DNA of 64,000 nucleotides from Piromyces finnis finn (GCA_002104945.1 MCFH01000023.1:690362-754361), one strand, 5' to 3'; numbered from the stretch's first letter, positions 61,918-63,155 are shown. The notes: generated from the sequence alone by a model not told the origin. A program made the numbers and translations.

Positions 61918-63155
61918 TTACATAATAACACAGTCACCCTTCTTCTTGTGACTCTTCTTAGAAGCCTTAGAAGAGGTGGAAGCAAGAGAAGCCTTAGAAG
62001 CCTTAGTGTCTTCAGCAGCAGTAGTGTTAGCTTCTTGGTCCTTCTTGTTCATGTACTTAATAAGATCAACAACACGGTGAGAGTAACCGTATTCGTTATC
62101 GTACCAGGCAACTAACTTAACGAACTTTTCGTTTAATGAAATACCAGCTAAAGCATCGAAAATTGAAGATCTGGCATCACTAATGAAATCAGAAGAAACA
62201 ACATTTTCTTCAGTGTAACCTAAAATACCCTTTAATTCTTCAGATTCGGAAGCTTCCTTAACAGCTTGCTTAATTTCATCATAAGTAGCAGCAGTCTTTA
62301 AGGCAACAGTAAGATCAACAACAGAAACATCTGGAACTGGAACACGGAAAGACATACCAGTAAGCTTACCCTTTAATTCTGGAATAACAAGGGAAACAGC
62401 CTTAGCAGCACCAGTAGAAGCTGGAATGATGCTAATTTATTAAATATTATAATTAAATTTAAATTTATTAATTATAAGATAAATATATATTATTTCTACA
62501 ATAATTTTAATAATTTATATTTAAATCTTTAATGTTTCACTTACTTTTGACCAGCACCACGACCAGATCTCCAATCCTTACCAGATGGACCATCAACAGT
62601 CTTTTGAGTAGCAGTAGTAGCGTGACAAGTGGTCATTAAACCTTCAGCAATACCGAATTTGTCATTAATAACCTTAGCTAATGGAGCTAAACAGTTAGTA
62701 GTACATGAAGCGTTAGAGACAACAGTCATTGATGGATCGTATTTGTCAAGGTTAACACCACAAACGAAGGTTGGAGCATCCTTAGATGGAGCAGAAATAA
62801 CAACCTTCTTAGCACCAGCCTTTAAGTGAGCAGAAGCCTTTTCAGTAGTGGTGAAAATACCAGTAGATTCAACAACATATTCAACATCAAGATCCTTCCA
62901 CTTAATGTTAGCTGGATCTCTTTCATTGAATAAAACGATCTTCTTACCACCAATAACTAATTTATCATCTTCAATTTTAATTTCTTGTTCGAAGATACCG
63001 TGAGTGGAATCGTATTCACATAAGTACTTCATGTAATCTAAAGTCATGAATGGATCGTTGATGGCAACGACTTCAACATCTTCAGTTTCATAAGTGGAAC
63101 GAAGAACAAGACGACCAATACGTCCAAAACCGTTAATACCAACTCTAATAGTCAT
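61918..63155 (-). CDS. GAPDH: Glyceraldehyde-3-phosphate dehydrogenase with a C-terminal polybasic-CaaX extension (2 exons, 374 aa)
   Basis: Motifs [29 protein letters not shown] (catalytic Cys), [14 protein letters not shown] (catalytic His) and [15 protein letters not shown]. Intron 62432-62544 (CAA AA|gtaagt...tag|C ATC). Ends ...[13 protein letters not shown]. Confidence 0.97.

What the first reader, a model, noticed from the sequence alone, without database searches (positions are those of the whole stretch)
61918..62037. GAPDH with a K-Ras4B-type farnesylation signal (polybasic + CVIM): a predicted membrane-anchored glycolytic enzyme
Seen: after the normal GAPDH end (YMNKKD) the frame continues 39 codons, [39 protein letters not shown]. 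The extension uses the same preferred codons as the enzyme core (AAG, GCT, TCT, GAC), unlike the very AT-rich flanks, so it looks selected rather than random readthrough. Catalytic Cys, His and the NAD-binding motifs are intact. Known: CVIM is the K-Ras4B CaaX box, X=Met favours farnesyltransferase, and an upstream Lys cluster is the second signal for anionic or plasma membranes; nearby Ser residues can act as a phospho-switch. Inference: a lipid-anchored GAPDH that localises glycolysis to a membrane such as the rhizoid tip or the zoospore flagellar membrane, analogous in logic to tethered sperm GAPDHS. I do not recall a prenylated GAPDH being described.
Basis: partly seen in the sequence, partly recalled or inferred. 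Interest (0 to 1): 0.92.

Follow-up and report, generated by a model that had tools for sequence, protein, structure and literature searches.

The report
GAPDH paralogue with conserved farnesylation tail
Anaerobic gut fungi keep a second copy of the sugar-burning enzyme GAPDH whose extra tail ends in a conserved lipid-attachment signal like that of the K-Ras protein, so this enzyme is probably tethered to a membrane, which has not been described for GAPDH.

Summary
Observation confirmed. The window is from Piromyces finnis. A two-exon gene on the minus strand (63155..62545, 62431..61918) encodes a 374-aa GAPDH identical to ORX49762.1. After the normal GAPDH end, 39 more codons finish in CVIM-stop.

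The tail is real coding sequence:
- It has 44% GC, against 8-14% in the intron and flanks, and uses the codons of the core.
- All four P. finnis RNA runs hold every sampled 31-mer across core, tail, stop and 3'UTR.
- Intronless mRNA contigs from relatives carry it.

Twelve distinct orthologous tails were found, from P. finnis, Piromyces sp. E2, Neocallimastix californiae, N. lanati and gut metatranscriptomes.
- They vary in length (30-52 aa) and sequence (dN/dS 0.35-0.65, core 0.14).
- All end C-[V/I]-[V/I]-M-stop, in seven codon spellings.
- A Lys/His-rich stretch (net +3 to +6) precedes the Cys.
- They form one clade (100/100), separate from the tail-less 334-336-aa GAPDH of the same genomes.

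A selected CaaX farnesylation signal on a catalytically intact GAPDH paralogue is well supported. Actual lipidation, the target membrane and the physiological role are untested. No paper on a prenylated GAPDH was found. The gene is already annotated as plain GAPDH, so only the lipid-anchor reading is new.

The parts
62545..63155 (-). Exon 1 of the tail-bearing GAPDH (Met1 to first two bases of codon 204): NAD-binding domain, catalytic Cys151 and His178
   Evidence: ORF and translation; Pfam Gp_dh_N 1.1e-39; spliced product identical to P0273 = P. finnis ORX49762.1
62432..62544 (-). 113-nt intron, GT..AG, phase 2, 8% GC
   Evidence: Sequence; joint 62431->62545 in RNA contigs of X1 and X5, with near-zero depth inside the intron; same position but 156-366 nt long in orthologues
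62038..62431 (-). Exon 2, GAPDH catalytic-domain part, up to the normal C-terminus ...[10 protein letters not shown]
   Evidence: Pfam Gp_dh_C 4e-44; the canonical paralogue ends at this position
62008..62037 (-). Tail, variable acidic or neutral linker (residues 336-345)
   Evidence: Length-variable and indel-rich among orthologues; AF2 confidence falls here
61969..62007 (-). Tail, conserved Ser/Lys block (residues 346-358, [13 protein letters not shown])
   Evidence: Best conserved tail block after the CaaX box in 10 coding sequences; function unknown
61933..61968 (-). Tail, basic patch (residues 359-370, [12 protein letters not shown])
   Evidence: 6 Lys and 1 His in the last 15 residues before the Cys, net +5; orthologues net +3 to +6, one with His5
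61921..61932 (-). CaaX box Cys371-Val-Ile-Met374
   Evidence: C-[VI]-[VI]-M in all 12 distinct genuine tails, in seven codon spellings
61918..61920 (-). Stop codon TAA directly after the CaaX box
   Evidence: TAA or TAG directly after Met in all 10 coding sequences
61745..61870 (-). Conserved blocks in the 3'UTR, specific to this paralogue (TTTAATAGAGT, ATCCTATCGT, ATCAGCTCTAAA, AATATAGATAAAA, TTTACTA)
   Evidence: Aligned across Piromyces, Neocallimastix and metatranscriptome loci; absent from the canonical paralogue's 3'UTR; no covariation, so function unknown

Best explanation
The gene encodes a catalytically competent GAPDH paralogue of anaerobic gut fungi (Neocallimastigomycota). Its disordered 30-52-residue C-terminal tail is a lipid-anchor module. 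The proposed pathway is as follows. Protein farnesyltransferase recognises the terminal C-[V/I]-[V/I]-M. The last three residues are then removed and the farnesyl-Cys is carboxymethylated. The farnesyl group, together with the adjacent Lys/His-rich patch, holds the enzyme on the cytoplasmic face of an acidic membrane, most likely the plasma membrane. A GAPDH tetramer would carry four such anchors on long flexible linkers. The isoform would supply NADH and 1,3-bisphosphoglycerate, and with PGK also ATP, next to the membrane, while the tail-less canonical paralogue carries bulk cytosolic glycolysis. Shown here: the gene structure, transcription, intact catalytic motifs, selective retention of the CaaX box plus basic patch, and coexistence with a canonical paralogue. 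Inferred: farnesylation (about 0.75), membrane tethering as its purpose (about 0.6), plasma membrane as the site (about 0.4). The physiological role is open.
For: The tail is coding: composition and codon usage match the core. It is transcribed contiguously in P. finnis, and the splice is confirmed. Intronless mRNA contigs with 5' and 3'UTRs, some ending in poly(A), carry the tail in six relatives. A profile search found 11 tail-bearing clusters of 365-387 aa, and cluster members name N. californiae ORY19947.1 and ORY86609.1 and two N. lanati proteins. All 12 distinct genuine tails end C-[VI]-[VI]-M-stop. The codons differ (TGT/TGC; GTT/GTC/ATC/ATT; ATT/GTA/GTT; TAA/TAG), so the motif is kept through at least five nucleotide changes, all synonymous or Val<->Ile. 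Elsewhere the tail evolves fast (dN/dS 0.35-0.65 against 0.13-0.15 in the core), and its indels are always in frame. The basic patch is kept in character. AF2 gives pLDDT below 50 for residues 352-374, i.e. a flexible linker of the kind prenyltransferases need. The tail-bearing proteins form one clade with 100/100 support on a long stem. The canonical P. finnis GAPDH (334 aa, intronless, GC3 0.45 against 0.275) lacks the tail. From established knowledge: CVIM and CIIM are the K-Ras4B and K-Ras4A boxes, and X=Met favours farnesyltransferase.
Against: There is no biochemical evidence of lipidation or membrane association. The genes for the prenylation and CaaX-processing enzymes were not checked in this genome. 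The basic patch is less dense than in K-Ras4B, and an Asp often sits directly before the Cys. One error-laden metatranscriptome contig (P0327) reads through the stop. No tail-bearing copy was seen for Anaeromyces, and Pecoramyces has only an exon-1 model (P0152), so the taxonomic spread is incompletely known. Contig depth suggests the isoform is well expressed in ordinary cultures, at roughly a tenth of the canonical paralogue (a poor measure), which gives no hint of a stage-specific role.
Confidence: 0.7

Rival explanations
1. The tail is prenylated, but not to place glycolysis at a membrane. The lipid would serve a moonlighting role of GAPDH (vesicle traffic, membrane fusion, cytoskeleton or nuclear-envelope binding) or a prenyl-dependent protein-protein contact, as in Ydj1, Pex19 or lamins.
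For: It rests on the same CaaX conservation. The clade sits on a long stem with 12 fixed core substitutions, among them Arg54Ile and Arg247Ala, and a one-residue insertion, which suggests some functional shift. The conserved Ser/Lys block in the tail could be a binding or phosphorylation site.
Against: All catalytic and cofactor motifs are intact, and the core is under strong purifying selection (dN/dS 0.13-0.15). This argues that enzyme activity is retained. The basic patch next to the CaaX box is the classical second signal for membrane binding.
Confidence: 0.15
2. The tail is a regulatory or interaction region that is not prenylated. The single Cys would be used for redox control, S-acylation or a disulfide, loosely like the chloroplast GapB/CP12 C-terminal extension. 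Alternatively the Lys-rich stretch acts as a nuclear localisation signal.
For: C-terminal regulatory extensions of GAPDH exist in plants (PMC4436894, listed). KKSHKKK resembles a monopartite NLS (inference). The tail is disordered.
Against: A redox or NLS role would not require the Cys to lie exactly four residues from the stop in every orthologue, nor that a1 and a2 stay Val/Ile and the last residue Met through seven codon spellings. There is only one Cys and no acidic C-terminal end, unlike GapB/CP12.
Confidence: 0.1
3. The extension is a neutral run-on of the reading frame, or an annotation artefact, with no function.
For: Low-complexity Ser/Lys/Ala composition; faster evolution than the core.
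Against: It is conserved across at least two genera and many metatranscriptome lineages. The frame survives many indels, the terminal motif is invariant, codon usage is coding-like, and it is present in mature mRNAs.
Confidence: 0.03

Closest known systems
K-Ras4B / K-Ras4A hypervariable region (farnesyl-Cys plus polybasic second signal; CaaX boxes CVIM and CIIM)
   Same: The terminal tetrapeptides are identical (CVIM, CIIM; also CIVM). A basic stretch lies directly upstream, there is no second Cys for palmitoylation, the linker is disordered, and Ser residues lie within the basic region.
   Different: The cargo is a tetrameric metabolic enzyme, not a small GTPase. The basic patch is weaker (net +3 to +6 in 15 residues) and the linker much longer (26-48 residues before the Cys). 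It works like the K-Ras anchor but is not a Ras-family member.
Sperm-specific GAPDHS (testis GAPDH tethered to the flagellar fibrous sheath)
   Same: It is a dedicated GAPDH paralogue with an added terminal extension that fixes glycolysis at a particular cell structure, alongside a soluble housekeeping paralogue.
   Different: GAPDHS uses an N-terminal proline-rich extension and protein-protein binding, not a C-terminal lipid signal (own knowledge). Its solved catalytic cores match residues 3-337 only.
Toxoplasma gondii GAPDH1 at the pellicle (Pomel 2008, PMC2563030; Dubey et al., Mol Microbiol 103:618, cited in PMC7289922)
   Same: A glycolytic GAPDH that relocates to a membrane system. From my own recollection of Dubey et al. 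(paper not held), cortical association depends on S-palmitoylation of an N-terminal Cys, which would make it the nearest precedent for a lipid-modified GAPDH.
   Different: That is reversible N-terminal acylation of the single housekeeping enzyme, with no CaaX box and no dedicated paralogue or tail.
Peroxisomal or glycosomal GAPDH isoforms with C-terminal PTS1 (fungal read-through or alternative-splice isoforms; trypanosomatid glycosomal GAPDH)
   Same: A short C-terminal addition to GAPDH acts as a targeting signal and gives a compartment-specific isoform.
   Different: PTS1 is (S/A/C)-(K/R/H)-(L/M). The tail here ends V-I-M, with no basic residue at -2, so it does not fit. The extension is hard-coded in a separate gene, not made by read-through.
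Chloroplast GapB C-terminal extension / CP12
   Same: A disordered extension of about 30 residues on the C-terminus of GAPDH is tolerated by the fold.
   Different: GapB/CP12 tails carry a Cys pair and an acidic end and act as a redox-controlled autoinhibitor. Here there is one Cys at -4 and a basic end.

Membership tests
Phosphorylating GAPDH (Pfam PF00044 + PF02800) | Both Pfam domains above the gathering score | tested here: met
   Gp_dh_N 135 bits; Gp_dh_C 61 + 150 bits on the two exon pieces. Best PDB matches are GAPDHs at E about 1e-153.
Phosphorylating GAPDH (Pfam PF00044 + PF02800) | Catalytic Cys and His, phosphate-binding Arg/Thr, GxGxxG and Asp for NAD | tested here: met
   SNASCTTNC at 147, CHATT at 177, FRVP at 232, STGAAKA at 209, GFGRIGR at 9, NDPF at 33. 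All are invariant columns in the 28-sequence alignment.
Phosphorylating GAPDH (Pfam PF00044 + PF02800) | Enzyme activity | not testable with these tools
   Core dN/dS of 0.13-0.15 argues for retained function.
CaaX substrates of protein farnesyltransferase | Cys exactly four residues from the C-terminus | tested here: met
   TGT GTT ATT ATG TAA at 61932-61918. Same register in all 10 coding sequences and all 12 distinct tails.
CaaX substrates of protein farnesyltransferase | a1 and a2 aliphatic; X = Met/Ser/Gln/Ala for farnesyltransferase | tested here: met
   Only Val or Ile at a1 and a2, and Met at X, in every genuine sequence. The apparent CIMF of N. lanati KAG4097115.1 is a gene-model artefact, because the DNA reads CIVM-stop. 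The specificity rule itself is established knowledge.
CaaX substrates of protein farnesyltransferase | Flexible, hydrophilic linker of about 10 or more residues upstream of the Cys | tested here: met
   AF2 pLDDT below 50 for residues 352-374. Ser/Lys/Gly-rich composition.
CaaX substrates of protein farnesyltransferase | Isoprenoid covalently attached, -aaX removed, Cys methylated | not testable with these tools
   Needs labelling or mass spectrometry.
CaaX substrates of protein farnesyltransferase | Farnesyltransferase, CaaX protease and methyltransferase genes present in the organism | not tested
   No tool could search the rest of this genome, and the scan's notes hold nothing on these enzymes. 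They are near-universal in fungi (own knowledge).
K-Ras4B-type two-signal anchor (farnesyl + polybasic) | Dense polybasic cluster directly upstream of the CaaX box | tested here: inconclusive
   4-7 Lys/Arg (plus 0-5 His) in the 15 residues before the Cys, net +3 to +6. This is clearly basic and conserved in character, but less dense than K-Ras4B.
K-Ras4B-type two-signal anchor (farnesyl + polybasic) | No upstream Cys for palmitoylation | tested here: met
   There is a single Cys in every tail.
K-Ras4B-type two-signal anchor (farnesyl + polybasic) | Ras-family GTPase domain | tested here: not met
   The body is GAPDH. The resemblance is functional, not membership.
PTS1-bearing peroxisomal/glycosomal GAPDH | C-terminal (S/A/C)-(K/R/H)-(L/M) | tested here: not met
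   The termini are VIM, IVM or IIM.
GapB/CP12-type regulatory extension | Cys pair forming a disulfide, with an acidic C-terminal end | tested here: not met
   One Cys and a basic end.

The most novel reading that the evidence does not exclude
The prenylated GAPDH may be one part of a membrane-tethered energy module peculiar to these mitochondrion-less fungi. Unchecked notes of this scan report that, in the same genome, triose-phosphate isomerase has a hidden C-terminal extension ending CCTIC and nucleoside-diphosphate kinase has a read-through extension with a Cys-Cys/basic tail. If these are also lipidated, several consecutive ATP-yielding or ATP-distributing enzymes would be anchored to the same membrane, for example the plasma or flagellar membrane of the zoospore. 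That would be a lipid-anchored counterpart of the sperm fibrous-sheath glycolytic complex. The paralogue-specific conserved 3'UTR blocks could add mRNA-level localisation or stage control.
Probability: 0.2. Interest if true: 0.85.

Novelty: new variant of a known kind. Interest (0 to 1): 0.68.

Why it matters
GAPDH is among the most studied enzymes. Its known ways of reaching membranes are non-covalent binding, an added protein-binding extension (GAPDHS) or reversible acylation. A hard-coded farnesylation signal kept across genera on a dedicated paralogue would be a new way of compartmentalising glycolysis. It would also add a metabolic enzyme to the short list of prenylated proteins outside signalling. 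In anaerobic gut fungi nearly all ATP comes from substrate-level steps. A membrane-bound GAPDH therefore gives a concrete handle on where energy is made for transport, rhizoid growth or zoospore swimming. The prediction can be tested directly with standard prenylation assays. The tail could also serve as a compact native membrane tag for engineering these biotechnologically relevant fungi.

Tried and rejected
- **Read layout:** The second showed no P. finnis contigs over 61892-62059. That hole was an artefact of record filtering, because a word search over 61890-62110 gave 100% in all four runs.
- **Length limits in protein searches:** Searching the protein database with the tail region of the exon-2 ORF found only two fragments, because of the length window. 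The exon-1 search found only canonical short paralogues. Full-length tail-bearing proteins appeared only with a profile built from a canonical protein plus exon pieces.
- **Wider distribution:** The exhaustive representative search showed no other GAPDH whose match extends into the tail, apart from this clade.
- **Alternative signals:** PTS1, a GapB/CP12-like regulator, an NLS-only reading and neutral run-on were considered and rejected, or ranked low, for the reasons given under rivals.
- **The 'CIMF' ending:** This ending of N. lanati KAG4097115.1 looked like an exception but is a spurious-intron gene model.
- **RNA structure in the 3'UTR:** The blocks are conserved in sequence only, with no compensatory pairs and -4.9 kcal/mol. 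Rfam found nothing in the window.
- **Origin of the clade:** The sister relation of the tail clade to the canonical anaerobic-fungal clade had SH-aLRT 90 in the quick tree but was unresolved in the careful tree. Only two shared derived residues were found. The time and place of the duplication therefore remain open.
- **Literature:** No hit for prenylated or farnesylated GAPDH, nor for the protein accessions. The Toxoplasma GAPDH1 palmitoylation paper is not held.
- **TPI and NDK leads:** The leads from earlier notes could not be tested, because no tool could reach those loci.

Full report
**What is there.**
On the minus strand the window carries a two-exon gene: exon 1 at 63155..62545, a 113-nt GT..AG intron at 62544..62432, and exon 2 at 62431..61918. 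Exon 1 ends with two bases of a codon that the first base of exon 2 completes (Asn204). The spliced reading frame is 1125 nt, giving 374 aa.

Pfam finds Gp_dh_N and Gp_dh_C, and the latter ends about 40 residues before the stop. All solved GAPDH structures align only to residues 1-338. The catalytic Cys151 and His178, the GxGxxG motif, Asp34 and the phosphate-site motifs are all present, in columns that are invariant across 28 fungal and animal GAPDHs.

**The tail is coding sequence, not run-on.**
- The tail has 43.6% GC (GC3 38%), against 8% in the intron and 11-14% in the flanks. Every tail codon is also used for that amino acid in the core, nearly always as the commonest one.
- In flank composition, a frame staying open for 39 codons has P about 0.013.

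**Identity of the window.**
The spliced product is identical to P0273, which is NCBI ORX49762.1 / UniProt A0A1Y1V8T9, 'glyceraldehyde-3-phosphate dehydrogenase [Piromyces finnis]', on a 754-kb contig. The gene model with its tail is therefore already public, under a generic name.

**Transcription.**
RNA-run contigs of the window's organism show the exon-exon joint 62431->62545 and almost no depth inside the intron. That layout had a hole over the tail, which the tool warns can come from record filtering. A separate word search over 61890-62110 (core, tail, stop and 28 nt of 3'UTR) found 100% of the sampled 31-mers in all four runs, from three studies. The tail is thus contiguous with the core in those libraries.

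In relatives, six metatranscriptome contigs of 1.25-1.43 kb (L007, L011-L014, L016) are intronless. They hold a 5'UTR of 40-75 nt, the full reading frame with tail, and a 3'UTR of 56-222 nt. Three end in A-runs.

**Comparative evidence.**
The exhaustive representative search with exon 2 found only one other protein whose match ran into the tail (P0002). A tail-restricted search added P0151. A profile built from a canonical protein plus the exon pieces then retrieved 11 full-length clusters of 365-387 aa. Cluster look-up added these named members:
- Piromyces sp. E2 OUM62481.1;
- N. californiae ORY19947.1 (366 aa) and ORY86609.1 (377 aa);
- N. lanati KAG4108622.1 and KAG4097115.1.

Pecoramyces ruminantium has a model truncated after exon 1 that is 94% identical (P0152).

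Across the 12 distinct genuine tails:
- Length ranges from 30 to 52 residues, and all indels are in frame.
- The front part is variable and partly acidic.
- A block like [11 protein letters not shown] is conserved.
- The 15 residues before the Cys hold 4-7 Lys/Arg, net +3 to +6. One Neocallimastix paralogue has five His instead.

Every tail ends C-[V/I]-[V/I]-M and then a stop. At the DNA level there are seven spellings of the box (Cys TGT/TGC; a1 GTT/GTC/ATC/ATT; a2 ATT/GTA/GTT; stop TAA/TAG). That means at least five changes at a1 and a2, all synonymous or Val<->Ile.

Pairwise dN/dS is 0.13-0.15 for the core and 0.35-0.65 for the tail. The tail is therefore a fast-evolving linker with a strictly kept end.

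Two apparent exceptions were examined:
- The CIMF ending of KAG4097115.1 comes from a spurious intron. The genomic DNA reads TGT ATC GTA ATG TAA (L019).
- P0327 is a single contig with many Lys-to-Asn changes, and its stop is also altered.

**Relation to other GAPDHs.**
P. finnis also has a canonical 334-aa GAPDH (P0199). It is intronless, ends ...AYMDSKN at the position where the tail begins, and has stronger codon bias (GC3 0.45 against 0.275). A third 336-aa paralogue also exists (P0286).

RNA contigs resembling the canonical paralogue had roughly ten-fold higher word depth than the exact contigs of the window gene (about 20,000-25,000 against 1,000-1,800). The tool itself calls depth a poor measure of expression.

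In a maximum-likelihood tree the tail-bearing proteins form one clade (100/100) on a long stem (0.27). Both Piromyces proteins lie in it, as do the cluster representatives of both Neocallimastix proteins (P0276) and a sequence (P0281) with the same tail as the 377-aa one. Its position relative to the canonical anaerobic-fungal clade is not resolved. The paralogue and its tail therefore predate the split of these two genera. Twelve core positions are fixed differently in this clade, none catalytic.

**Structure.**
AlphaFold2 with a 28-row alignment gives a confident GAPDH core. The C-terminal helix is extended with falling confidence, and pLDDT is below 50 for residues 352-374. This is consistent with an exposed, flexible tail.

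**Mechanism.**
By established knowledge, a Cys four residues from the end, followed by two aliphatic residues and Met, is the canonical farnesyltransferase signal. CVIM and CIIM are the boxes of K-Ras4B and K-Ras4A. An adjacent basic patch without a second Cys is the classical second signal for acidic membranes.

The comparative pattern here is an invariant register and residue classes within an otherwise drifting, length-variable, disordered tail on a dedicated paralogue. That pattern is expected if the box is used. I therefore rate farnesylation at about 0.75 and membrane tethering of an active enzyme as the best overall explanation (0.7 as stated).

The long linker may allow several of the four anchors of a tetramer to reach one membrane; this is inference. 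Which membrane is targeted, whether the Ser-rich block is phosphorylated, and what process is served all remain untested.

**Literature.**
Full-text searches found no paper describing a prenylated, farnesylated or CaaX-bearing GAPDH. Nothing linked anaerobic fungi, GAPDH and prenylation, and there was no mention of the accessions. The nearest precedents are listed under closest known. [quoted passage not shown]

**Earlier notes of this scan.**
Unchecked notes report, in the same genome, a TPI extension ending CCTIC and an NDK read-through extension with a Cys-Cys/basic tail, as well as families of CaaX micropeptides. I could not reach those loci. They motivate the 'novel case' but are not used as support.

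**Verdict.**
The gene is known and annotated. The conserved lipid-anchor signal on a GAPDH appears unrecognised, which makes this a new variant of two well-known kinds (GAPDH and CaaX/polybasic anchors).

Noticed in passing
window 61745-61870 (minus strand); L001:4459-4586, L006:1637-1764, L007:1221-1348, L013:1296-1423, L017:4554-4681: The 3'UTR of the tail-bearing GAPDH holds sequence blocks that are nearly invariant between Piromyces, Neocallimastix and metatranscriptome lineages, in otherwise very AT-rich and divergent DNA. The canonical paralogue's 3'UTR lacks them. No covarying base pairs were found, so this may be a protein-binding, localisation or polyadenylation element.
   Followed up: partly
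window 60700-60900 and 54471-54670: A GC-richer 200-nt island about 1 kb downstream of the GAPDH gene is 96.5% identical to part of the 'retroposed insert' that the scan noted at 54277-54700. It is therefore a dispersed SINE-like repeat with at least two copies in the window. No Rfam family matches.
   Followed up: partly
L019:2823-2837 (N. lanati JACVTC010000046.1): The public model KAG4097115.1 ends CIMF because a spurious intron was called from the GT inside the Val codon to an exon 1.2 kb downstream. The DNA encodes CIVM-stop in place.
   Followed up: yes
P0152 (Pecoramyces ruminantium, Orpsp1_1 model 1181375): This orthologue's model stops after exon 1 (203 aa, 94% identical). Exon 2 and its tail are probably missed by the annotation.
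   Followed up: no
P0324 / P0281 / L012 (Neocallimastix 377-aa paralogue): In this second Neocallimastix copy, the Lys run before the CaaX box is replaced by five consecutive His (KKHHHHHCIIM). That could make membrane binding pH-dependent.
   Followed up: no
L018 (P. finnis MCFH01000077.1), P0199, P0286: P. finnis has at least three GAPDH genes. The canonical one is intronless with much stronger codon bias than the tail-bearing one, and a third 336-aa paralogue groups with an Anaeromyces protein.
   Followed up: partly
P0318: A GAPDH labelled as coming from a Bacillota metagenome-assembled genome is 75% identical to the anaerobic-fungal canonical enzyme and falls among fungal sequences in the tree. 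It is probably eukaryotic contamination of that bin.
   Followed up: no
window 8893-10707 (-), 55202-56803 (-), 31969-32991 (+), 12205-13134 (-): Other ORFs in the window carry HMG-box, CotH, UAA nucleotide-sugar transporter and RabGAP-TBC domains. The HMG-box gene may relate to the HMG/homeodomain/CaaX-peptide cassettes that the scan noted elsewhere in this genome.
   Followed up: no
window 59687-60250 (+): This long open frame is made only of Leu, Tyr and Ile runs. It reflects trinucleotide-repeat DNA, not a gene.
   Followed up: no
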